Both the position numbers and the translations under genes were made by a program. A stretch of DNA of 64,000 nt from Bigelowiella natans CCMP2755. Lineage: Eukaryota; Protista; Cercozoa. Below the pieces are notes generated by a model. It had not been told where the DNA came from. It saw only the letters and a program-made list of their open reading frames with translations, and did no database searches. The stretch covers positions 1 through 64,000 of the forward strand of contig ADNK01002159.1 of NCBI GenBank assembly GCA_000320545.1, written 5' to 3'. Positions 2,220-62,950 of the stretch are shown here, one piece after another; position 1 is the first letter of the stretch, and each line of letters begins with the position of its first letter.

Positions 2220-2915
2220 CGCCGTTCTGCTCTGCTCGGAGATTGTCCAGAGATTTTCCGATCGACTCCCAGGCTAGATCCCTCTTGCATTGTCGCAGGC
2301 GCGAAAGCCAATGGGGTTTCGCAGCTTCGCGCCGGAATCAAGCGCTTTGGGATGATGATCCTTGCTAGCTTGGGATCAGCTGCACCATTGCAATTGCTTC
2401 ACTCACTCACCAATGCATTTGTTCAATCATTCAGCAAAGAGAAAAGAACAAACGAGGGGCAAAGTCAACATTAGAAGCCAAGTTGGTCACAAAAAAACGA
2501 ACAGCTGAAGAACCCCCAATGACGTTTGTTCTAGCGTTGCACGCAGGCTGGCAGGCTGCAAACTAGCTGCAGTGAATGCTTTTGAACGATTGTTTTTGTG
2601 GAGCCAGACAGGACACATGCACGCTGTCTAGCTAGGCAGGCTTCGTGCTTGATCGGGACAACTAGGCAATGCAGATGCCGCACCTCTGTGCTCTGGCCGT
2701 GAGCGGTCCACACACGCTAGCACATCCATTTGTGGACGTCAAAATTTGCGTTATGTCAACACATCTAGACATGTGCAATGTTGGTGCTAGATGAGTGCAC
2801 TTTCACAATGCGCTCATGTGCGTGAAGATTGCATCAGAGTGGGTGTGTGCATGCGTGCTGTGCACATCTAGACATGTCTAGCTAGCTAGATGTGACGAGC
2901 CCGTCTGTCTTGCTG
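2220..2915. other. TpA-depleted, CTAG-retaining intergenic island
   Basis: Hand count gives about 16 TA in ~700 nt, 14 of them in CTAG. Rich in TGCA, CATG and CACA. Confidence 0.75.
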
Positions 2916-3332: not shown

Positions 3333-5330
3333 TATAAATCGTGTGGATACCATGTCGCTGACGCCTGAAGGAGACGTCCTTGTGGTCTGGACGGGAGAAG
3401 AGCTTCCCGGCAAGATCGGCAGCGCGCTCGTAAGCGGTTTGTTCTCTAAGTCGCGAGGATCGTAGGTGAGAAATTTAATGTTGTGCGCCATCACCTGAGT
3501 CAACTATATACACACGCATACAAAAGCTTAGCCAAAACAGTTTGGCAGCTTAAATTGAACAATAATGTACGAATTCATGAAAAAAACAAATAAACTATTA
3601 TTTCACGAAGTTCCGACGATATTGAAAACAAGCTGCTGCTACTGCTACTCATACTAGTAGTAGTAGTAGTAGTAGTAATGGTAGTACCGGGAGTGTGCCT
3701 GTTGGTCTCATGGGCCGCTCTTCTCTCTGCCCTAACGGAGAGCAATGAGGATCTAATCCTGATAATAATAATTATGATGATGATGATTATTATCATTATT
3801 AATCACTATAATGATGGCGGTGATCATGTTCAAGAGATTGTGAATGTGATGAAGATGATAGGTAAAGATACTCGCACTCTCTCTCTCAATTCAACTTACT
3901 TCTCAATCCATCGTTGACCGGCGGTAATCGTAGGTACTGGCAAATTCGGTTACCTGAGAATCAAATCAAACAGTGAGAGAGAATAATTGATTGATTGATC
4001 GGTTACTCATGACGATGAGACCGGAACAACCAATGAAACAACTTGAAACACAACAAACGAGTAAAGGGGAATCTATTTCCCCGATGAAGAAGATAAAATT
4101 ATCATTTAACATAGTTATATGTTGTCTATTTAGATGCTTTACGAAACAAGTTTCTGCATTGTGATCGATAGAGATAGACGCAGCAGGTCTCTTCTTACTG
4201 TCCTACTCTTCTCTCTTCCCCTCCTTCCCTCACTTACATCGATGGCATTCAAGGAACTTTCGTATTCCCTAAGATAATAACAAAGGGCGGTGAGTACCCA
4301 TGTTTTTCATTCAATGCTCAAGGGGAGCGGGGAGAGGGGGGGTGGCATGCTTGTGGATCCTGATTACTTCTTCATTCTCAACCTCCATCCCCTCCCTCTA
4401 GTTCCCACCCACCCATCCACACACACGCACATACATTTATTATTTCTTTATTTTATTTGCGACCTTCATTCCAAGATTGCCTTTTCCGTAGCCCTTACCA
4501 GATACTGAGTGTACCTATTGTTATTGAAAATATATTTTAATATTGCTCTTTGCTCTGTTTACGTTATCTGTCCTTGCTGCTCCCTTAAAAAAATGCCTCG
4601 GCCAGATTCGATGCGAATGCAAGAGGCAAGATTCCCTTTCATTTTGTTTTGGCACGGGCAGGAGAACTACTGTCGCTCTCTTAACCAAGCGCGCATGTGC
4701 ACGTGTGCATGTACGTATGTGTGTATGTGTGTATGTGTGTGTGTGTGTGTGTGTTAATGCTTCTGCAGGCATGTGACAGTGAGTATGTGTGTTCGTCATC
4801 ACCTGCGGGTCCGTGTAGAGGTCAGAGACTCCTTGGATGTCCACGAGGAGAACCTCCCCGTTGCTTATGTGCCACGAAAAATGCGAGAAGGCCTTGGTTA
4901 GAGAGAGGGGGGGGGAAAGGGAGGTGGAGCGAAGAGGGAAACAGGGGGAGGGGGGGGGGGTCGACAATCATTACGCCTTCTCCAAGTCTAGTGAGGAATG
5001 ATGTACATCATCAGTCAACGAAAGAGGAGTAGACAGAGGGAGGATGATGATGAAGTGCTCTGCGGCAACTATGAATAACTTTAAGCTCCTCCTCGAGACT
5101 AATCGTTTCGTTTTTCTTTTTGCGTTATTGCAGATAACTCATGGGTTGATTTCTACTGATTTATCTCCGGTGCGACCTCACCTGCGGCGTATTCCTCTCC
5201 TCTTCGTTTACGTAACCATAGTTACTATTGTGCTTTCTGGTGATTGGTGGAGAGTGGGTTGTGGGGGGTGGGGGGAATGAGCAGGAGTGGCTACAATCTT
5301 ATGTGTCAGATATGTTATCAGTGTGCGTAC

Positions 5331-10913: not shown

Positions 10914-11916
10914 GATAATGCGGATAATAGCGGAGGAGGAGAAAGAGAGTTGGGGGATGAGTGAGAGGACTACCGAATTGCTCCGTGGTTCTTGGGCATG
11001 ACAAGAGCAACAACTACTACTACTACTACTACTACTACTACCACTACTACTAATACTACTACTATTCAACAGCGGCCAAGTCTATGGAATGAACAGCCCC
11101 ATCAGCCACTCGTTTACCACGCACCGCAGCGCCTAGCTCTGCATCGCATGCTTGGTGTCCAGTGTCAACCTCCTCCGTTGGTTGCCGTTCCGAATCTTTC
11201 TTATCTTCCGAACGTCCCTGATGCCATTCCGCAGAATCTCAACAACATCGTTGTCCTCCCAGCAGATAACGCGTACGCAATTAATGCGTATGCCTCTGTA
11301 GATCATCGTATCCCCCCCAATCTCCAGGGGCCTAGAAAGGTAGCGAGGCGATAATATACGTCACTATCACTGATGCTGTTTGGTGATGATGCGTCTGCTG
11401 AGTTTGAGGATGAGGTCGGTGTGTAGTAAAAATTGAGAGACTGTGGGTTAAAAAGACCCCTAGCTCTCTTCTCTGCTTGACATATGAAAGCGAGTCACAT
11501 GTCGATGGCTTAAAATGATAGATTGCATATGCTGTTGTTGCTGCTGTTGGTGGTGGTGGTGCCTCTTTCCTGACCTCGGTTTCTCTACTACACAGGGTGG
11601 TGGGAAGGCGCCCCCCCTTTCCAATAGCAGCTGCCATCAGTGCAAGAAGAGGATAACTGCGTGTCACTATTGCCAGGAGCCCTTAAATGTCATGGTATTG
11701 TTGAACAAAGAAGCAAACATCAACCTGCACTACCACCAACAAACAACAACAATACCACAAAACTGTGACGCAATGCAAGAATATCATCGATAATTCCTGT
11801 AACTGGCCAGACTAATTGTCCGAAATGTGGGAACGCCGTGTGCATGTTCTGCACCAACAAGCTGAGAAATGGATTTGTGGTAAGAAAGAGAGAGGGAGAG
11901 AGAGAGAGGGAGAGAG

Positions 11917-11975
<59 letters not shown>

Positions 11976-12158
11976 CGTGCTATTATTATTGTAACAGTCT
12001 ACATATGATTTTGGTATATCCTTTAAGCGCTGTAAAAAGAAGTACTGCTTTCGATGCTTGAGGAAATCTTACGACGAGAGCATGACCAACCTCTCCAACA
12101 TGTACCTAAGTCTAACCCCCCTCTTGCACACCCTTTACCCCCCCCTCCTTTCTCACTC

Positions 12159-12197
<39 letters not shown>

Positions 12198-12441
12198 ATT
12201 CCAATCTCACCGATAAACACACAAACACGAAGAAGAGAGAAGAAAAAATGTCCCAACAACTAATCCAATGTGTCATCGTCGCGATGTCTCTATCAGAACG
12301 ACATGGAAATGTCCTTCCTGCCGCAACATTTGCGTGTGTGCCGCATGTAAACGTATCCGCATAGCCAAAGGAAAAGCTCAGAACAATCACGAGCACACAA
12401 GTAGCTCTAATGATATGGATGACAAGAAAGCGCCTCGATGA
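9219..12441 (+). CDS. Q/P-rich protein with C-terminal zf-4CXXC_R1 zinc finger, ~7 exons
   Basis: Spliced C-terminus reads SSCHQCKKRITACHYCQEPLNVM|TNCPKCGNAVCMFCTNKLRNGFV|RCKKKYCFRCLRKSYDE..|TTWKCPSCRNICVCAAC, with stop TGA at 12439-12441. The N-terminus has 4 x 23-aa repeats. Confidence 0.8.
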
Positions 12442-12615
12442 TTTCCAGCAGGCTTGATCAACTACTCTACAAATATTTTGCACGTAAATAATGTTGAGAC
12501 TAATACATTTATTTTTAGATCTCTGCTGCATAAATGACTGCGAAACAATTGAAATTGGCAAAAAAAATAGTTCGCACATTGTACATGTGCATCTAGATAT
12601 GTATTGAAAATGTGC

Positions 12616-12657
<42 letters not shown>

Positions 12658-12789
12658 GTGCATATGTGTGTAAGACGTGATTTCACTTTGGCCATTCTAG
12701 CATTACATTTGTAATCGCATGTTGCTAGCTAGCTAGCAGGGCGCGATTGATTAGCACACAATCCATGCTAGCATGCTGTGTGTTTGCAC

Positions 12790-14070
12790 AGCATGTGTGA
12801 GATGGATGTAATCTAATCAATTAAATTTGTGCTAACATGAGACGGATGTAATGAAATGTTTAAATTTTTTCAATAGTCATCCTAATGTAGCCATGCAATG
12901 CAGCGGCTACAGCGCTCAAGTTGTATCTGTTGGTTTCCTTGGTCACATGATGCATGCATGAACAATTGTGCACGATGATTAGGTCTAGCATGGCGCGCTT
13001 TTCGCGCAGCAGATCGACTTGTTTTTTCTGCGGGTGTGAGACGCGCAGTTTCGTCATTGCGATCCATGATCGCCGTCAGTTGTTTGTTGAATCTGAGTCT
13101 CTGTGGGCCGCACTTGCTGCATTGCAGAATGTGGTCCATGTCTTGCAATGTGTTGCACGCAGCGCACGTTGCCTCTGATTTTGTGCGTTGCCCTCTGGAC
13201 AGCATGAATGATCTGATGTTGCCAGCGCCACAAATGGCGCGCATCCATGATGTGGCAATGCTTGGCAGCTTCAATGTGATCCCTGTTGTCCGCGAACCAG
13301 GCATGAAGTCCAATTTCTTCAAATGCATGGCCTTGGTTCCCTCTTTTTTCCAGTTTTTTTCGAAATTAAATGCGGCGTTCCGCATGATCTTTTTGTTGTG
13401 TGCACTCAATTTCTTTTTCAGTGTTTCGTTGGCAGCACGAGTTGTGGGGCATTCCGCCCGAAGCAGTTTGGTCGTGATCAAACTGAGTCGGCGGTGCAAG
13501 GATGCTCTGTTCCACGATCTAGTCGTGTTGTGCCATTTGTGTTCCATCAAGGATTCAATGTGATGACCGAAGGAGCTCCAATTGAGTGCTTCTTCTTCCA
13601 CCACGTGTCCGCTGCCAGCAACGTCCTCCACCCATGCATTGGTTCGCAACCATGTCTTGGCACACTGAACCTGTGTGCGATGACGTGGTGGCAAGGTTGC
13701 CGCTAGTACATGGGGGGTGTCATTGGATGTGGACCCTGGTAATCCCAGCACTCTTTTCAGTGTCTGTGATTCCATGGAATCCAGCTGTTTCATTTTCATG
13801 TTTGTGATTGGACCTCCACACAGGTGCGACGTGTCTGCTTGTGGCTGTGAACCACGTGCGGTGAAACTTTGATCTCACATTGAATGGCATGTGAGATCGA
13901 GTGGAACACAGCCTGAGTAGAAATCTTCTCTTTTTCTGCAGCCTCATGTGCACAGCAAGGGCGTATTTTTCGAAAGTTGATCTTTCGTCAAACCACAGCC
14001 CCAAACATTTGCCACATTCTTTTCTTTTTGATTTTCCTTGCAGGTTGAGTGTCATGTTCCACAACGCTTG
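12790..14070 (-). mobile_element. 5'-truncated non-LTR retrotransposon (LINE) ORF2 remnant: RT thumb, C-terminal CCHC knuckle and 3' end; TA-hypermutated
   Basis: KCLGLWFDERSTFEK resembles KYLG..D..LTF..H; RHVAPVW resembles Y.APVW; LKRVLGLPGSTS; C-x2-C..DHILQCSKC..R. There is one frameshift near 13800 and a short direct repeat GAGAYGGATGTAAT at 12798/12839. Confidence 0.85.
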
Positions 14071-14142
14071 TGCTAATGTACTAAGGCCTCACATAGCTGT
14101 GCACTAGTGCGATGCAGCGACCACAGCGCGTGTGATCGCCCA

Positions 14143-14182
14143 AATAAACAAACACAATCTTGGTAGCGCTGTAGCCGCCGCT
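14143..14182 (+). mobile_element. Short inverted copy of the LINE 3' coding end
   Basis: aataaacaaacacaatcttggtagcgctgtagccgccg aligns with the reverse complement of 12901-12935 (aaccaacagatacaacttgagcgctgtagccgctg). Confidence 0.6.
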
Positions 14183-14780
14183 TACTTTCTAGCTTTGCAC
14201 AGTATTATTGCTATCGTGTGCTTTGCATTGCGCTACAATGTGGACACTGGCCCTTGGACAATACTTGTCTTTCATTCCCTGCTAGCCTGTGCTATGCATT
14301 GTAGATGTTTAACATGTACAAACTGCAGCCTCTAAACTGCTTGTCAAAGCGAGTCATGCATACTATCATGCTAGCATGTGCCATGTGCGTGGCCTGCATC
14401 ATGCGATCATCGTGCGGTAAATTTCAGGTAAGGCAGAGAGAATTGGACATATTTATGCATGTATCATACGATTGCATATATCAGCATTTTATTACAATTA
14501 AGATTTTTACTTTTTACATTTTTTATTTATCAAAGCCGAAGTCGGTGCTCACTATCTATCACCAGACTAAAGTTTGTTTACCCTTTACGAATGAGACGTA
14601 TATCAACCTTGTTGTATGCCTAGCAGCACTAGCGTAGTGGTCAAGGTAACAGCATATGTTCTATTTTGTCTCCAGATGCACAGCCGTCTCATTTTCTTCT
14701 TCTCTTCTAATTACAATAAATGATAATGTGAACAATAGTAACAATTAACGACAACGAATCATCGCCGACGAATGACTTTG

Positions 14781-21485: not shown

Positions 21486-23278
21486 CAGTAGTAGTAGCGG
21501 CAACATTGATATGCAAGTGCATATAGTCGCTGTTTACTGATGAAAATGACGTTCAAACGCAGGATCAGGAGGAGTAGCGGCGGTGCAGCCCAGTAGCTTC
21601 TCTGATAGGGAATGCCGAACTGCGTAATAATTCAATTCGATTCAACATTATTCGGCCAGCATAACTCACCCCCCCCGCCACCACTCGCACCTCTCGTACA
21701 ATCATCAGTACATTCCACGTTATTATTCCTGGCAAATGATGTTTTATGAATGTCGCTGAGCACGGCGCCGATAGACGTCGCTAGAGAAACAGACACACAA
21801 ACCACCCTCCACGACGAGAGTTGAACTATGGTTCTCGATTCCTTTTTCTAGACGACCGTAGCAAAATCGGGAGTTCCCTTGAAAAGGGGGGGTGGGGGGG
21901 GGGGATGCAGGGAGGAAGTGCAAACCTGATCTCGTCGATTATCATTGTTGATTATTAAGGATGGAGACCTACGTGCTGCTAGAGGAAATGCTGAGTGCTT
22001 CCGAGCCGACAGAAAATCTTAGGCGACACGGTAACGACGACGACGACGACGACGACGATGATGATGATGATGATGATAGTGATGATGATGGCGATGATAA
22101 TTGACCTTCTCCTTCCTCAATCTCCCCCCCCCCCTCTAGAGCTGATACAGAACCTTGTAGCGACGGTGGTCGCGAACCAAAAGGCGATTTCCCGTCGAGT
22201 GACAACCACCGGCAACCCGTCTGTCCTCGATGAGCTACTGCGAGCCAACGACAGCTTGATCTGGGTCATCAAATACTACCACGGTCTCGTCAATGGCACG
22301 ATGCAGCGCATTAAGAAGACCAAGAAGAAACCGGCAAACAGCAGTAGTAACAGCAACAAGGGCGTTCCCCACCAGCCGTCGATGGACGACGGTGACAGTA
22401 AGAGGAGGGGCAGGAAGGATAGCGAGAAGAAGAACAGGAAGAGCCGATTTAGCAGCAGCAAGAAGAAAAAGGACACCAACGTGCCATCAGCGGGTAAAGT
22501 CAGCAAGCTGAAGAAGAAGTGGCTCTCACTGCGAAAGGAATGGCGGGAGGATAAGAGCGACAAGGCGCTGCGGAAGGAGATGAGGGCAGCGAAGAAGGCG
22601 TACGAGGCGGCCAAGGAGGCATATGAAGAAGCTGAGGACGAAGATGAGGAGGAGGAAGAAGAGGAGGATGAGGAGCCTCGGCCCGCAGCTGGGAAGAAAA
22701 ACCAGCCAAAAACATCTAGTAGAGATAGTAAATTTCGCGCGCCTGAAGCGACGCTATTCAACCTAGCCCCCCCTCCGGGAGATGGCGTTGCTGGAGCTCC
22801 TTCTTCGGCAGCAGCGTCGTCATCCTTTCAGCAGCCCCCCCCCCATCAAGCACCACAACCAGTTGTGTCTGTGCTGGACTTTGACACGACTGCTACCACG
22901 TCCACTGCGATCACCACGCCAGCTGCATCTGGGTCGTCAGCTCCAGCCGCAGGAGGAGGGGGGAGAGGAGGAGGAGGAGGAGGAGGAGAAGATCTGTCTG
23001 ATCCATTCGCCGCCTTGGCCTTGCGCCACTCTGTCACAGCAGCACCGACGACCGCCGGGCCTAATCAAGGAATTGTCGGCAATCAGCAGCAGCAGCAGCA
23101 GGCAGCTGCTGGCGGTGGCGTGAACCTGATGGATCTATTCGGTAATGACGCCACACCAGCTCCATCCCAGCAGCAGCAGCAACAACAACCAGCTCAATTT
23201 AACAATCAGCAACCAGGAGGAGGGAATAGTAATAATGGCGGTGACCAAGGGATTGACCTGATGGGAATCTTTGGATGA
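18731..23278 (+). CDS. TOM1-like VHS-GAT endosomal adaptor
   Basis: VHS: MANADTSNIEDA|VVRATHEILTKPDWSANI|GICDW..|ALRVILSRLK..VQ|..LLATLMKNC..|VLVKTWA..YDQLKATGCKFP. GAT: LLEEMLSASEP..|..VLDELLRANDSL. The tail has DPF, VLDFD and DLF/DLM motifs. Confidence 0.88.
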
Positions 23279-24270: not shown

Positions 24271-26255
24271 TTAGAACATGCCTCCCATGCCGCCCATTCC
24301 TCCTCCAGGCATTGCAGGTGCAGCAGCAGGTTTGTCCTCTGGAATCTCGACGATGATGGCCTCAGCCGTCATCATCAGCGACGAGACACTAGATGCGTCA
24401 AGAAGCGCGGTTCTAACCACCTTCGTAGGGTCGATGACGCCGGCCTCGATCATATCGACGTACTCGCCGCACGCCGAGTTCATGCCCTTAGTGGACATTT
24501 TCCCGTCAGCCTCCTCGAGCAGCTTGCCCACAATCACTTCAGCATTCATGCCAGCGTTGTGGATTATCTGCTTCGCAGGGATCTGGATGGCTCGCTCCAC
24601 GATCTCAACACCGGTCTTGGCCTCAAACGTCGACTCAGCCTTGAGCCCCTCCAGCATCTTGGACGCATAAAGAAGAGCGCTGCCGCCCCCGGGAAGCACG
24701 CCCTCCTCCACAGCCGCGCGGGTTGCGTTGAGTGCGTCATCCACGCGGTCTTTCTTCTCACCGACCTCAACCTCGTTTGCACCCCCGACCTTTATCACTG
24801 CGACACCGCCGGAGAGCTTCGCAAGACGCTCGCCCAGCTTTTCCTTCTCGTAGCTGCTTTCGGTGCTGTCCATTGTCTCCTTGATCAGACCGCAGCGGGC
24901 CTCAACGTCAGCCTTAGAACCCGACCCGTCAAGGATGATGGTGTCGTCCTTCGTGGAGGTAAACTGCATGCAAGAACCGAGCATCTCGAGGGTTGTTTCC
25001 TCCAGCTTCATGCCGGTGTCAGAGGACACGAGAGTGGCGCCGGTGAGAATAGCAATGTCCTGCATGTTGGCCTTGCGGTTATCACCAAATCCAGGGGCCT
25101 TCACTGCGGTGACCTTAAGGTTTCCGCGCAGCTTGTTGAGGACGAGGGTTGCAAGGGCCTCTCCATCGACATCCTCAGCAATGATCACGAGGTTGCGGGT
25201 GGCGCGACTGCATGCGTCAAGAATGTTCAGCATGGGCTGCATCGAAGAGATCTTGCCCTCGTAAACGAGGATGGCAGGCTTTTCCATCTCAACCTTCTGA
25301 GACTTAGGGTTGGTGATGAAGTAAGGGGAAAGGTACCCACGGTCGAACCTCATTCCCTTAACGGTCTCAAGCTCGTCCATCAACGTCTTTCCGTCCTGCA
25401 CGGTGATGACACCGGAGTTTCCGACTTCCTCCATGGCATCAGCGATGAGATTTCCGATGGCGACGTCGTTGTTGGCCGAAATGGTGGCCACCTGGGCGAT
25501 CTCCTCCTTGGTGGTGATCAGCTTTGTTGACGATTTCAGCGATTGGACAACCTGCTCGACTGCACTGACCATTCCCTTGCGGAGCTCCATTGGATTCATG
25601 CCGGCTGCCACGGACTTAACTCCCTCGGAATAGAGAGCACGAGCAAGCACGGTGGCGGTGGTGGTTCCATCACCAGCCTTGTCGTTGGTCTTGCTTGCAA
25701 CCTCGCGAACGAGCTGTGCGCCCATGTTTTCGTACTTATCAGAAAACTCAATCGACTTGGCAACGGTAACGCCATCTTTGGTGATTTTTGGTTTGCCAAA
25801 AGCCTGCTCGATCAGCACGTTGCGTCCTTTTGGACCCAGAGTGGTCTGCACAGCATCAGCGAGCTTGTTCACTCCGCTCAGCATCTCCGCACGTCCTTCA
25901 TCCTATTTTGTGGTGTTCAAATAATCAGACGCGCCGTTTCGTATGGCTAGATGAGTCAGATCAGGACGCTAGCGAGGAAAGCTCTCATCATTACTAACAG
26001 GAGCTTGCCAAAATACACTAGTTCTACCAAAATGCAAAATAAATAATATGGGAACGCAGAAAGACATATGATTTGAGTATCACGACTGATAAGATGTCGA
26101 ATCCTAGAATAGAGATCGCCATGAAGTCTTTCATGCATGAGAATTACCCCAAACTTGATGTCCTTCCCAGAGGACATCATTCGAACGTTTTTGCCGGCCT
26201 GGGACCTTGCCTTGAGCCCGAGCGCGCGGGTGACTCTCTGCACAGTTCTGTTCAT
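24271..26255 (-). CDS. HSP60: Mitochondrial chaperonin 60; exons 26255-26148 and 25902-24271
   Basis: GroEL motifs [20 protein letters not shown] and [12 protein letters not shown], plus a GGM tail. An Arg-rich presequence is spliced as KDIKFG|DEGRAEML. Confidence 0.98.
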
Positions 26256-59478: not shown

Positions 59479-60655
59479 GCCCCTTTCCCCCTCTTTATCT
59501 AGTGATATCGGGGGCGTGAAACCTGGCCTGACGAGGCCTATTCTGAAGCTTTGGACAAAACTCATTATTGAGTTGCCGTCGCAAGCAGCTTGGTTGAGCT
59601 TGGACGAAATCCAGCTCTGCCACCCGTACATCTCCGACATTTTGAAAGGAGCAGACTGCCAGTGCAGTGAGTGAGTGAGTGAGTGAGTGGTAGATGTGGG
59701 GGGGGGGGGGGGGGGGGTAAGGCCCAGTATTATTCAAAACGACACTGAAACCGATGTTTTTGCTTTTGTCCTGCTACATGCATCTAGCGACATCGCTGTG
59801 TCTGTGCCGGCGTGGGAATATTATACGTGACGGTTTATCCCTCCCGCCCCCGCCCGCCCCCCACACCACCGTGTAAACGATCTCGATCCAGGCGTTTTCC
59901 CTCTCCGAGTAGTCGTCGTCCCTGTTCTTAACTTCCTCCTCTAGCGATCGTTGCATCTTGGACGTCTCCAGCGCGGATGTTGACGCGCAAAGCAGCTCCT
60001 TCACAATCATACTGTCCGCCCCCACCTTGTCGCGGATGCAGTTTACTAGCGGCGTGCTGAGCCCGGACACGTTCATGGACAACTGCACCTCCACGCTATA
60101 GCCCTTAAAAGATAGACGGATTTGATTTAGAATAGTTGGATTCTGGTGGGTCTCTATGGCAGGACATCTCACGGTGCACATATCACGCTGTCCCTCTCCT
60201 CTCCTCCTTCTCCTCCCCTCCCCTCCTCATGCTCGCCATACGGTGTTATTGAATGCCTTCATCAACTCCTTCCTAGTCTTTCTCCTCTTCTTTTCCTATC
60301 GAGTGAAACGTGTGTCACGTAGCATTGCAACAAGCGGAAACAACATTGCACCGGGAGAGAACAGAGAATGGGAAGAAAAACGCCGACAGAGAGAGGGGCA
60401 GGAAAAGGAAGAGGAAAACCATCATTTTTAGCACCTTTGCAATAGAGTGTGAAGTCGCGTCCTCAAAGCGAAGCCGTTTCAATCGCGACGCCGTTTTACG
60501 GGGTTCTTTCTTCTTTGGAGGTAATCCTAGTCGCTGTAAAACACAATGGTAAATAACAATAAGGACAACAATTTCGGGGAGATAACGGCAGAATAGGTGA
60601 CAGCAGTAGACGCATTCTACTTACCTAGAGATTCAATACGTGATTGCTTGAGAAT

Positions 60656-60699
<44 letters not shown>

Positions 60700-61160
60700 C
60701 TCCCCCGTTCGCACGTAAGTTGTGCTTTCTTTCTTACTCGCTCACTATATCCGCTACCTGCCTCTCCAACTCCTCCCCCCGCTCCTTCTTTCGCTGGTTT
60801 TTCTTGATCCCGTTGGCGATGAGGTACTTCCAATCATCGGGGTGGAACCGCTTCCACTTGTAGTACATGATCTGAATGGTCTCCGAGACCTTCTGCAGGG
60901 CCTTCTCGATGGTAGGCTCGGAACTGCAGTCGCTCTTATTGAGCAGCACGCTCGGCCGCTTGTTGTTCCGCATACTCCGGAGCGCCTCGGGGTGGCGGCT
61001 GGCGAAATCTGTGCAGGAGTTGAGGAGGTGTTTGCGGATCTCGGAGAGATTCATCTTCCCGGCCTTGAGACCGTCGTAGACGAAACGGACGGGCGTGCCA
61101 CAGTCGCAGTTCCTGATTGCATGTATTGATGATGACCAATCGTTAAACGGCATAATGCAT

Positions 61161-61199
<39 letters not shown>

Positions 61200-61404
61200 T
61201 CTCTATACATGTCGTTGTCTTCGATATTCATACACATTATAGTACCATTTGCAGTTCTTGAATATCTCGTCCTTTCGCTTTTGCTCTTGAGGATCCTTAG
61301 GCTCCGGTTTCCGCAAGTTTGTCGTGATACTGCTTTTATTTGAGCTGGATCTATTCTGGCCTAATGTTATGTTTACAAGCCGATATACACAAACACGGAA
61401 ACAT

Positions 61405-61451
<47 letters not shown>

Positions 61452-61465
61452 ACACTCATATTATA

Positions 61466-61537
<72 letters not shown>

Positions 61538-62950
61538 ATATATATTATATTTGCATATACTGTTTAATAGTAGCGCAATAAACATGAAGATTTGAGCGCT
61601 GCATCTTCGCAAAAATGAAAGCCACGGTGGAATTACTCAATGCTACCGTAAGGGAGCGCAACTTGGGTTGTAGTTTGATACTGGCCCTAATAAAAGTCAG
61701 CAGAGGACGAGAAGGAAGATGAGAGGAACAGTTTAATTTCGCGGAGGAATTCAGACTGGATATATTGGAGACCACCACGCACCTTATAATTATGATCGGG
61801 ATAAAATGTAGCTTGCTTCGATAACGGGGTCTGTGCTTTTACGACTGGCTGAAGCCTTTGAACCTCCCCTCTATTATTTCTACCGCCTGAGTTTGCGTTA
61901 TTTGTCGCCGAAGCTTGTACTTTGCCGGGCCCTCCCCGAGCTTGAGATCCACTATAATAATAGCCGCTGCTCCCATTAGCAACTGCCGGATTTGGGAACT
62001 CCTGACGATTTGCGACTGCGAGAAAATATTTCAGAATGAGGCGAAGCATTGACACAGGCAATAAAATTACCATTTACTACAGGTTGAGCTCCCTGTCGAT
62101 GAACCGGATATTGGTGTTCACGTCTACCACCCCTGGCAGGGTTATTATTCCTCTGTGCAGTGACTTGTGGAGCAGCAGATTGCTGTGTTTGGGTCGTGCA
62201 ATGTGTCCCGCTGGTATTTCTTGTCCCCTGGAAACGAGTATTTGTGGCCTTCCTAGGAGGATTTCCTGTTGGAGGATTACCAGGAATGCTGCTACTGTGG
62301 GAAGTCCCATGTGAGACATTAGTCGATACTCTTGAGTGGATATTCGGGGTGACAATGGGTTGACTTCGAGGCTGCTTGGGGCGAGGCTGAAGCTGAGAAT
62401 TATTCTGCTTAGGTTGTGAACTTGACTTCACAATTAACCTGTCTGGTTGTTGGACGACTGGTGATGGTGGGGGAACCACTTTTGACTGCATCTGTAATGC
62501 CATCTTTTCCTTATTACCGTCGTTGTCCTCCGTCTTGAGTGACCTTGAGTCTGAGGTCTTTAAAGTTTTTCCCCCAGAAGGAGAATCTTGCGATTTTATA
62601 TTGCTATTTGCACCAGCTCCAGAGCCAGATAATTTATTATCTTGTGTCTCGAGCTTCATTGTAACTGCCTGGGGTTTGGGAGTCTGATTTGGATTCATAA
62701 CCTGGTGAAAAATTTAAAAATAGGTTGTAATTACTCTCGAAATCCAGAGATAGTATTTTGGTGTCTCGAACAGTGTCTGCTCATTGTTTCGCGCACCCAT
62801 CCATTTAAATGTTACCTTTGATTCACATATTTTTTTTGAATGGCTATCGCTTGATTCCTTCTCTGTGGCAACGAAATCTCTGTTAAGGTTGGCTGGAACT
62901 TGCGGCGAAGTTACTTGAGATCTCGGTGACGCCTCTCCGGCACTTTTCAT
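58673..62950 (-). CDS. Hypothetical multi-exon protein: long Q/N/P-rich N-terminus, C-x-C..H-x4-C motif, folded C-terminal domain
   Basis: Chains ORFs 62950, 62698, 62073, 61237, 60181, 59640 and 59296 through plausible GT-AG sites. No family recognised. Confidence 0.6.

What the first reader, a model, noticed from the sequence alone, without database searches (positions are those of the whole stretch)
12880..14070. LINE remnant hypermutated TpA->TpG/CpA: a candidate 'inverse-RIP' genome defence
Seen: only 7 TA dinucleotides in 13021-14040 (1020 nt, hand count), against roughly 60-70 expected from base composition. CpG is plentiful. The 305-aa ORF has no Tyr. Established: non-LTR RT thumbs have conserved KYLG, LTF, LY, Y.APVW and C..Y motifs. 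Here they read KCLG (TGT), STF (TCA), FH (CAC), HVAPVW (CAC) and CSKC (TGC), each one transition away from a TA-containing codon. Both T->C and A->G occur on the same strand, so both strands were hit. This is opposite in direction to fungal RIP (CpA->TpA) and is not 5mC decay. Inference: a repeat-targeted process acting at TpA, such as a DNA adenine deaminase with 5'-T preference or a mispairing modified T or A. I know of no characterised mechanism for this.
Basis: partly seen in the sequence, partly recalled or inferred. Interest (0 to 1): 0.92.

Follow-up and report, generated by a model that had tools for sequence, protein, structure and literature searches.

The report
LINE copy stripped of TA steps
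This is a dead, truncated jumping-gene (LINE) copy in the alga Bigelowiella natans in which most TA steps were changed to TG or CA; the pattern is real, but it is the footprint of a TpA-specific hypermutation already shown by experiment in a 2026 preprint.

Summary
In detail: 7 TA in window 13021-14040 against 61 expected, with TG and CA in excess and CpG normal.

The stretch (14071..12836, minus strand) is a 5'-truncated copy of a ~5 kb endonuclease plus reverse-transcriptase LINE with over 50 copies. Long copies keep 6-13 TA in 3-5 kb.

Natural intact relatives from marine metagenomes have 224-233 TA and 41 Tyr in ORF2. Measured against them, 75% of TA sites in the genomic copies read TG (617) or CA (620), so there is no strand bias. 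Other transitions run at 3-9%.

Two caveats. The intact element is itself TA-poor in this span (o/e 0.25), and about two thirds of this copy's loss was inherited from its source lineage, mostly at synonymous sites. At least 13 changes, including Tyr codons, came later, at roughly 80-115 times the rate of other sites.

Added detail: TA in CTAG, CTAC/GTAG and CTAA/TTAG contexts is spared, ATA/TAT is favoured, erasure fades near the element's edges, and the element sits next to (TA)n repeats.

The genome is B. natans. The process was published by Mettrop et al., bioRxiv 2026. This scan noted it before on other DNA of this genome.

The parts
12836..14071 (-). 5'-truncated copy (1236 bp) of a ~5 kb LINE with an APE endonuclease and a reverse transcriptase. 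It covers the C-terminal part of ORF2 (about aa 759 onwards), the short 3' UTR and the shared 3' end.
   Evidence: More than 50 genomic copies share this 3' end and differ in their 5' truncation points. It aligns to positions 3744-4973 of the intact element L038. The long copy L036 has Exo_endo_phos_2 at E 2.5e-13 and RVT_1 at E 3.3e-5. The copy holds 16 TA against 78 expected.
13720..14064 (-). ORF piece covering the region after the reverse-transcriptase core (KCLG, STF, KFH, RHVAPVW)
   Evidence: 86% identical to residues 761-844 of the intact ORF2 protein P0001. L->S and two Y->H changes sit at ancestral TTA and TAY codons.
12882..13799 (-). The 305-aa Tyr-free ORF, which is the C-terminal region of ORF2 in a frame shifted relative to the piece above
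   Evidence: 82% identical to P0001 residues 848-1124. It reads FGH, SLH and CSKC where the intact protein reads FGY, SLY and CRKY.
12798..12835 (-). A second, 38-nt fragment of the LINE 3' end, directly downstream of the first copy
   Evidence: It repeats the terminal motif that ends in ...ATTACATCC.TCTCA. Similar stacked 3'-end fragments occur beside other copies.
12611..12672 (.). (TA)n microsatellite whose edges are a mosaic of TG and CA units: 18 TA, 10 TG and 3 CA units, all in phase
   Evidence: The same TA/TG/CA-unit mosaics flank other copies, in 9 of 29 5' flanks and 6 of 28 3' flanks, against 0.6% of background 40-mers.

Best explanation
The stretch is a dead, 5'-truncated copy of an R1-like LINE with an APE endonuclease and a reverse transcriptase, in Bigelowiella natans. 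The family tends to sit in or next to (TA)n microsatellites.

Its TA poverty is the footprint of the TpA-specific transition process that Mettrop et al. (2026) measured in mutation-accumulation lines. In chromosomal DNA taken as foreign, TA becomes TG when the A of one strand is hit and CA when the A of the other strand is hit.

What is shown here:
- The changes are TA->TG/CA.
- The two outcomes are equally frequent on the sense strand.
- The changes arose many times independently among copies.
- They stop at, or fade towards, the element's own junctions.
- They depend on the neighbouring bases. A at -2 or T at +1 favours change, while CTAG, CTAC/GTAG and CTAA/TTAG resist.

The window copy has two layers of loss. 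About 65 derived sites are shared with its closest relative L032. These are 61% synonymous, so most were probably fixed while the source lineage was still under selection. At least 13 sites changed after the split, and these include Tyr codons. Since the split, each TA site changed roughly 80-115 times faster than other sites.

What is inferred and not shown:
- The chemistry. My best guess is deamination of adenine to hypoxanthine in DNA by a deaminase that prefers a 5' T.
- The targeting. My best guess is that a silent-chromatin or small-RNA mark covers the inserted element and thins out at its edges.
For: Organism:
- The JGI Bigna1 gene model 68657 (P0010, EukProt B. natans) is encoded at 100% identity in this genome.

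Prior experiment:
- In mutation-accumulation lines all hypermutations fell on TpA, giving TpG or CpA. TpA-poor CDS were enriched for reverse-transcriptase and endonuclease-RT domains.

Family-wide erasure:
- All 30 copies studied are TA-poor, with o/e 0.00-0.49.
- Long copies hold 6-13 TA in 3-5 kb, beside flanks at o/e 0.6-1.0.

Direction of change:
- Four natural intact elements from marine metagenomes (ORF1 483 aa, ORF2 1158 aa, 99.8-99.9% alike) have 224-233 TA (o/e 0.62) and 41 Tyr in ORF2.
- At their TA sites the genomic copies read TA 251, TG 617, CA 620 and CG 30, out of 1649 cells.
- At other positions transitions are 3-9% and transversions 1-2%.

Independent events:
- 228 aligned dinucleotide sites hold both TG and CA among copies. 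With at least two copies of each state the count is 150, against 1-22 for every other double-transition pair.
- Within the window copy's own young subfamily (1-2% apart at other sites), Tyr codons read TAT, CAT and TGT in different members.

No strand bias:
- 617 TG against 620 CA, p = 0.95.

Edge effect, paired by site:
- 33 of 159 cells keep TA within 100 nt of a copy's own 5' junction, where 3.4 are expected from the same sites in longer copies.

Context:
- Retention is 0.42 in CTAC/GTAG, 0.34 in CTAG, 0.25 in CTAA/TTAG, and 0.02-0.07 in ATAN/NTAT.

CpG:
- CpG is not lost: 49 in the intact element against 53-57 in dead copies over the same span.
Against: - Nothing here shows mutation at this very locus in real time. 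Public contigs of the DNA runs break up inside the repeat, so they gave no verdict.
- The intact relatives are themselves TA-poor in this 3' span (o/e 0.25-0.32). Part of the signal is therefore a lineage property and not decay of this copy.
- Closely related copies share most TG/CA states. Many 'events' are inherited, so the cell counts are not independent.
- Erasure in the shared 3' region does not correlate with copy length or with age.
- The enzyme is unknown. I found no expansion of deaminase genes: one A_deamin locus and six dCMP_cyt_deam_1 loci.
Confidence: 0.85

Rival explanations
1. The same TpA process runs through a modified or oxidised thymine that mispairs with G (for example a 5-hydroxymethyl- or 5-formyl-uracil type base made at TpA), not through adenine deamination.
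For: TA is its own complement, so T->C on one strand and A->G on the other cannot be told apart from sequence. The symmetric 617:620 outcome fits both routes. No deaminase family is expanded.
Against: A search for Tet_JBP oxygenases found nothing. That search had no positive control, so the blank is weak evidence. Secondary A->G changes occur at A-A-T next to converted sites, giving AAATA -> AAGTG. These look like a second adenine hit on the same strand.
Confidence: 0.25
2. The process is triggered by repetition or homology, as in fungal RIP but with the opposite chemistry.
For: The targets seen here are multi-copy LINEs. Erasure stops at the end of the repeated unit and weakens near its edges, as RIP does.
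Against: The last ~75 bp of the element is the most repeated part, at roughly 400-500 times single-copy word depth, yet it is the least erased, with o/e 0.55. Short copies L026 and L027 keep 8 of 9 TA. The preprint reports that the hypermutated NCLDV insert is single copy.
Confidence: 0.12
3. The changes were made before integration, by editing of the LINE RNA (ADAR-like, with a 5' U preference) or of its cDNA. On this view each copy arrived already mutated.
For: ADAR enzymes favour a 5' U. Erasure coincides with the element's borders. Many derived states are shared between independently inserted copies.
Against: Editing sense RNA would give only TG on the sense strand, and editing minus-strand cDNA would give only CA. 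The observed counts are 617 and 620. Erasure depends on the distance to each copy's own truncation point. Host (TA)n on the 5' side of several copies is also converted. The preprint saw the changes arise in resident DNA. The shared states are mostly synonymous, which fits descent from a selected lineage.
Confidence: 0.05
4. No hypermutation is involved. The LINE family simply avoids TA through codon usage or selection against UpA in its RNA, and CpG decay makes the TG/CA excess.
For: The intact element is TA-poor in its 3' third, at o/e 0.25-0.32. In the intact element the derived TG/CA states are 65% synonymous.
Against: The intact elements have TA o/e 0.62 overall and 41 Tyr in ORF2. The dead copies fall to o/e 0.01-0.1 and lose conserved Tyr codons in different ways in different copies. 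Changes private to single copies are mostly non-synonymous. CpG counts do not fall.
Confidence: 0.03

Closest known systems
TpA hypermutation of integrated viral DNA in Bigelowiella natans (Mettrop et al., bioRxiv 10.64898/2026.01.13.699255)
   Same: Same organism, same TpA->TpG/CpA signature on both strands and same long-term footprint (TA down, TG+CA up). The targets are foreign DNA, including CDS with reverse-transcriptase or endonuclease-RT domains.
   Different: The preprint measured new mutations only in two viral inserts and found TE targets only through Pfam enrichment. It gives no copy-by-copy analysis, no neighbouring-base preference, no edge effect, no strand-balance test on TEs and no comparison with intact relatives. 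Those are added here for one LINE family.
Repeat-induced point mutation (RIP) of fungi
   Same: A dinucleotide-specific transition process that riddles transposon copies, is confined to the element and weakens at its edges.
   Different: RIP changes C to T (CpA to TpA), so it makes TA and lowers GC. Here TA is destroyed and GC rises. RIP needs duplicated sequence and a sexual cycle. Dependence on repeats is not supported here, and the preprint saw the process in clonal mitotic lines.
ADAR or APOBEC editing of retroelements in animals
   Same: Deaminase-type transitions with a neighbouring-base preference (ADAR: 5' U) that inactivate retroelements.
   Different: Those enzymes act on RNA or single-stranded cDNA and leave a one-strand bias. 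Here the two outcomes are equal (617:620) and resident chromosomal DNA is hit.
R1-clade, target-specific non-LTR retrotransposons (for example the microsatellite-specific elements of insects and fish)
   Same: APE endonuclease plus reverse transcriptase, two ORFs, a common 3' end with variable 5' truncation, and junctions in a simple repeat, here (TA)n. The nearest named proteins outside the family are R1-type fish elements at 23-27% identity.
   Different: Clade membership was not tested with a tree. Only about a third of junctions still show the (TA)n-type mosaic.

Membership tests
B. natans TpA hypermutation (Mettrop et al. 2026) | The genome is Bigelowiella natans | tested here: met
   JGI Bigna1 model 68657 (EukProt B. 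natans P012765) lies in the LINE protein cluster and is encoded at 100% identity over 173 aa at G000:C3316. The genome size of 91.4 Mb fits the ~94 Mb implied by the preprint.
B. natans TpA hypermutation (Mettrop et al. 2026) | The changes fall on TpA and give TpG or CpA | tested here: met
   Polarised on natural intact elements, 1237 of 1649 TA-site cells read TG or CA. Other transitions are 3-9%.
B. natans TpA hypermutation (Mettrop et al. 2026) | Both strands are hit | tested here: met
   TG 617 against CA 620 on the sense strand.
B. natans TpA hypermutation (Mettrop et al. 2026) | The rate is far above that of the surrounding genome | tested here: met
   Within the window copy's subfamily, 46-60% of source TA sites were lost while other sites diverged by about 0.8% per lineage. 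That is a ratio of about 80-115. Flanks keep TA o/e 0.7-1.0.
B. natans TpA hypermutation (Mettrop et al. 2026) | New mutations are observed at the locus in culture | tested here: inconclusive
   Contigs of three DNA runs match the unique flanks exactly. Inside the repeat they are only short multi-copy pieces.
Fungal RIP | C-to-T transitions, mostly CpA to TpA | tested here: not met
   The direction is the opposite: TA is lost and CA/TG gained.
Fungal RIP | Triggered by duplicated sequence | tested here: inconclusive
   The most repeated segment is the least erased. Some short copies escape. The single-copy target is reported only in the preprint.
RNA editing of retroelement transcripts (ADAR type) | A-to-G on the transcribed strand only | tested here: not met
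   T-to-C changes on the sense strand are as frequent as A-to-G changes.
APE-type non-LTR retrotransposon (LINE) | APE endonuclease and reverse-transcriptase domains in one ORF | tested here: met
   Exo_endo_phos_2 at E 2.5e-13 and RVT_1 at E 3.3e-5 in the dead copy L036. Both families are on record for the intact 1158-aa ORF2.
APE-type non-LTR retrotransposon (LINE) | Shared 3' end with variable 5' truncation | tested here: met
R1 clade of LINEs | Placement inside the clade in a reverse-transcriptase tree | not tested
   The only evidence is best named hits at 23-27% identity.

The most novel reading that the evidence does not exclude
The LINE lineage that is still intact in wild populations is itself being shaped by the TpA process. 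At sites where the family's ancestor had TA, the intact element now reads TG or CA mostly where this is synonymous (74 of 114, against 80 of 254 possible changes at the TA it keeps; p = 3e-9). Its 3' third is already at TA o/e 0.3. That would be an arms race in which an active transposon sheds the defence's target dinucleotide. Together with the neighbouring-base rule and the fading of erasure within a few hundred bases of each copy's edges, it points to a chromatin-guided enzyme acting on double-stranded DNA.
Probability: 0.35. Interest if true: 0.7.

Novelty: already known. Interest (0 to 1): 0.42.

Why it matters
TpA-directed hypermutation of foreign DNA is a striking genome defence, a chemical mirror image of fungal RIP, and its enzyme and targeting signal are still unknown. 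This window does not discover it, because a 2026 preprint did.

The LINE family does supply useful material for the open questions:
- A natural before-and-after pair: intact elements in marine metagenomes against erased copies in the genome.
- A ranked list of favoured and resistant four-base contexts that any candidate enzyme must reproduce.
- A strand balance that rules out RNA or cDNA editing.
- An edge effect that constrains how targets are marked.

Tried and rejected
- Pfam on the two window ORFs gave only noise. The domains became visible only in longer copies.
- Read laying. Three DNA runs and one RNA run were laid on 12300-14600. The unique flanks are identical to the window. Inside the repeat only short multi-copy unitigs lie, so the few 'other letters' (for example 13311 C>T, 13369 A>G) cannot be assigned to this locus. 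There is no verdict on ongoing mutation.
- RNA in the same call. No read lies inside 12916-14070. Only the multi-copy last ~40 nt is covered, by reads with poly-A loose ends. Neighbouring genes are also thinly covered, so silence of this copy is only weakly supported.
- Length or age dependence. Erasure in the 3' region shared by all copies does not correlate with copy length (rho -0.24, p 0.2) or with divergence at other sites (rho 0.17, p 0.4).
- Strand-coordinated clusters of the APOBEC type. The correlation of TG/CA outcome between neighbouring sites is about 0 at all distances, with few pairs under 15 nt.
- Simple model of TG-versus-CA choice from the flanking bases. The cell counts are noisy and not independent. 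Only the retention ranking is used.
- AC/GT mixed sites as a sign of a second, ApT-directed process. 8 of 22 lie inside ancestral TATA. Most of the others are A->G at A-A-T beside a converted TA. No ApT depletion is seen (AT o/e 1.0-1.1).
- CpG decay is rejected.
- Tet_JBP search: no hit, but also no positive control.

Polarity came from natural intact contigs and from in-memory column tallies.

Full report
**Observation.** Window 13021-14040 has 7 TA where 61 are expected (o/e 0.11). TG is at 1.51, CA at 1.86 and CG at 0.75. The whole window has TA o/e 0.78. In a sliding scan this is the only kilobase-scale island of that kind in the 64 kb window.

**What the stretch is.** A search of the window's own genome found more than 50 copies that share a 3' end at window 12836/7 and start at different points.
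- The window copy (14071..12836, minus strand, 1236 bp) is one 5'-truncated member. Other members run on upstream for up to ~5 kb.
- The longest dead copy carries an endonuclease-RT domain (Exo_endo_phos_2, E 2.5e-13) and a weak RVT_1 match.
- A protein search with a 719-aa open frame of copy L032 found an intact 1158-aa ORF2 at 84% identity (P0001). The nearest named outsiders are R1-type fish elements at 23-27% identity.
- The element is therefore a LINE with an APE endonuclease and a reverse transcriptase, probably near the R1 clade. No tree was made.

**Organism and prior knowledge.** Earlier notes of this scan named Bigelowiella natans and a 2026 preprint, and I checked both.
- The 90% cluster of P0001 contains JGI Bigna1 model 68657 (EukProt B. 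natans P012765). That 173-aa protein is encoded at 100% identity in this genome.
- The preprint is Mettrop et al., bioRxiv 10.64898/2026.01.13.699255. In mutation-accumulation lines, 231 of 302 nuclear point mutations lie in two integrated viral regions.
- Nearly all of them (230 of 231) are A->G or T->C, and all of those fall on TpA. The rate is about 1000 times the background.
- TpA-poor CDS are enriched for reverse-transcriptase, endonuclease-RT and DDE domains. An ADAT2-like protein is proposed as the candidate enzyme.
- The preprint does not analyse transposon copies one by one.

**Family-wide erasure.** Every copy is TA-poor, with o/e 0.00-0.49. Copies of 3-5 kb hold only 6-13 TA, next to flanks at o/e 0.6-1.0. 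A truncated copy of a sister family at ~63% protein identity, in locus L031, is erased too.

**Direction of change.** Four contigs from marine metagenomes (Tara and others) carry the whole element with both ORFs open, 483 and 1158 aa. They are 99.8-99.9% alike.
- They have 224-233 TA (o/e 0.62) and 41 Tyr in ORF2.
- The dead copy L036, with 13 TA, aligns to one of them end to end at 90.8%.
- Taking the intact element as reference, the 1649 TA-site cells in the 30 genomic copies read TA 251, TG 617, CA 620 and CG 30.
- Away from TA, transitions are 3-9% and transversions 1-2%.
- CpG counts do not fall: 49 in the intact span against 53-57 in dead copies. This rules out 5mC decay.

**Independent events.** In an alignment of the 30 copies, 228 dinucleotide sites hold both TG and CA.
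- With at least two copies of each state the number is 150, against 1-22 for all other double-transition pairs.
- The intact element still reads TA at 129 of the 252 sites inferred to be ancestral TA.
KF[Y] reads TGC 8, CAC 6, TAC 2. CRK[Y] reads TGC 17, TAC 6, CAC 4. R[L]TF reads TCA 11, TTG 3, TTA 2.
- The intact protein reads RLTF, KFY, RYVAPIW, FGYH, SLYRRL and CRKY. It also reads KCLG, so that one claim fails.
- At FEKH the intact protein has His where the window copy keeps Tyr.

**Two layers in the window copy.**
- The window copy belongs to a young subfamily (L001, L032, L012, L021, L023) whose members differ by only 0.7-1.8% at other sites.
- With L032 it shares 65 derived states. It differs from L032 at 18 sites: 9 are TG against CA, and 9 are TA against a derived state.
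- In coding positions the shared states are 61% synonymous (39 of 64), against 36% for all possible changes. The states private to one copy are 26% synonymous (7 of 27; p = 0.003).
- Most of the shared layer therefore looks inherited from a lineage still under selection. The private layer is unselected decay after insertion.
- Tyr codons show this directly. FG[Y] is CAT in the window copy, TGT in L032 and L021, and TAT in L012. CRK[Y] is TGC in the window copy and TAC in L032.
- From 46-60% loss of source TA sites against ~0.8% change per lineage elsewhere, TA sites changed about 80-115 times faster.
- The intact element shows the same filter. Its derived TG/CA states are 65% synonymous, against 31% of the possible changes at the TA it keeps (p = 3e-9).

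**Mode of action.**
- The sense strand carries as many TG as CA outcomes (617:620, p = 0.95). Editing of the RNA or of first-strand cDNA would give one of the two, not both equally.
- Outcomes at neighbouring sites are uncorrelated at all distances.
- Erasure fades near the ends. TA o/e is 0.31 in the first 100 bp and 0.55 in the last 100 bp, against 0.03-0.1 deep inside.
- Paired by site, 33 of 159 cells within 100 nt of a copy's own 5' junction keep TA, where 3.4 are expected from longer copies. The excess declines out to 400-800 nt.
- Retention depends on the neighbouring bases: CTAC/GTAG 0.42, CTAG 0.34, CTAA/TTAG 0.25, TTAA, GTAA/TTAC and GTAC 0.13-0.15, and ATAN/NTAT 0.02-0.07.
- Eight of the 16 TA left in the window copy lie in the three resistant classes.
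- These features fit a process on resident double-stranded DNA that is directed to the inserted element.

**Junctions.** The element ends in ...CATCCGTCTCA followed by (TA)n or a related simple repeat. One intact contig ends in a pure (TA)n run, and another has a (TA)n-like 5' flank.
- In the genome, 9 of 29 5' flanks and 6 of 28 3' flanks are mosaics of TA, TG and CA units, against 0.6% of background 40-mers.
- Five 5' flanks consist almost only of TG and CA units. Host microsatellite next to the element has therefore been converted too.
- Near the window copy, the microsatellite at 12611-12672 has a pure (TA)16 core with TG/CA edges.

**Candidate enzymes.** The genome has one locus with an ADAR/ADAT1-type A_deamin domain and six with the dCMP_cyt_deam_1 fold. 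I saw no expansion. No Tet_JBP match was found, but that search had no positive control.

**Reads.** Three DNA runs match the unique flanks exactly but give only fragmentary multi-copy pieces inside the repeat. One RNA run has no reads in the body of the copy. Neither settles whether this copy still mutates.

**Verdict.** The process is already published. This scan has also noted it on other DNA of this genome.

Noticed in passing
G000:C1193:63736-64236, C1129:76871-77371, C3064:14470-14970, C515:13221-13721 and others: A sister LINE family at ~63% protein identity has at least 10 copies with uninterrupted 1179-aa open frames and near-identical scores. It looks young and possibly active.
   Followed up: no
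L031 (G000:C1920) about 60019-61873: A truncated copy of that sister family is also TA-erased, with o/e 0.00-0.23 in 400-bp bins.
   Followed up: partly
window 12839-12915: The last ~75 bp of the LINE has a word depth about 400-500 times that of the single-copy flanks in three DNA runs. RNA reads covering only the last ~40 nt carry poly-A loose ends. There may be very many tiny 3'-end copies, or a short non-autonomous element that shares this tail.
   Followed up: no
window 12720-12735 and 12766-12776; flanks of L039 and L041: GCTAGC / CTAGCTAGCTAG strings are common in the DNA beside the element. They also occur in the flanks of the metagenome contigs that carry the intact LINE, which suggests those contigs come from a Bigelowiella-like genome.
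   Followed up: no
alignment sites, for example family columns 4217 and 5070: Next to converted TA, a second A->G change recurs at A-A-T (AAATA becomes AAGTG), and CA sometimes goes on to CG. This is a weaker secondary target outside TpA that the preprint does not mention.
   Followed up: partly
G000:C2414:14438-15741: This is the only locus in the genome with an ADAR/ADAT1-type adenosine deaminase domain (PF02137). The preprint's candidate search covered ADAT2 and ADAT3 only.
   Followed up: no
window 2301-2700, 22801-23200, 25501-25900: Three 400-bp patches show milder TA depletion (o/e 0.24-0.28) with some TG/CA excess. Their nature was not examined.
   Followed up: no
window 11816-12263: (GA)n/(TC)n simple repeats here produce spurious Glu/Arg- and Ser/Leu-rich ORFs on both strands.
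   Followed up: no
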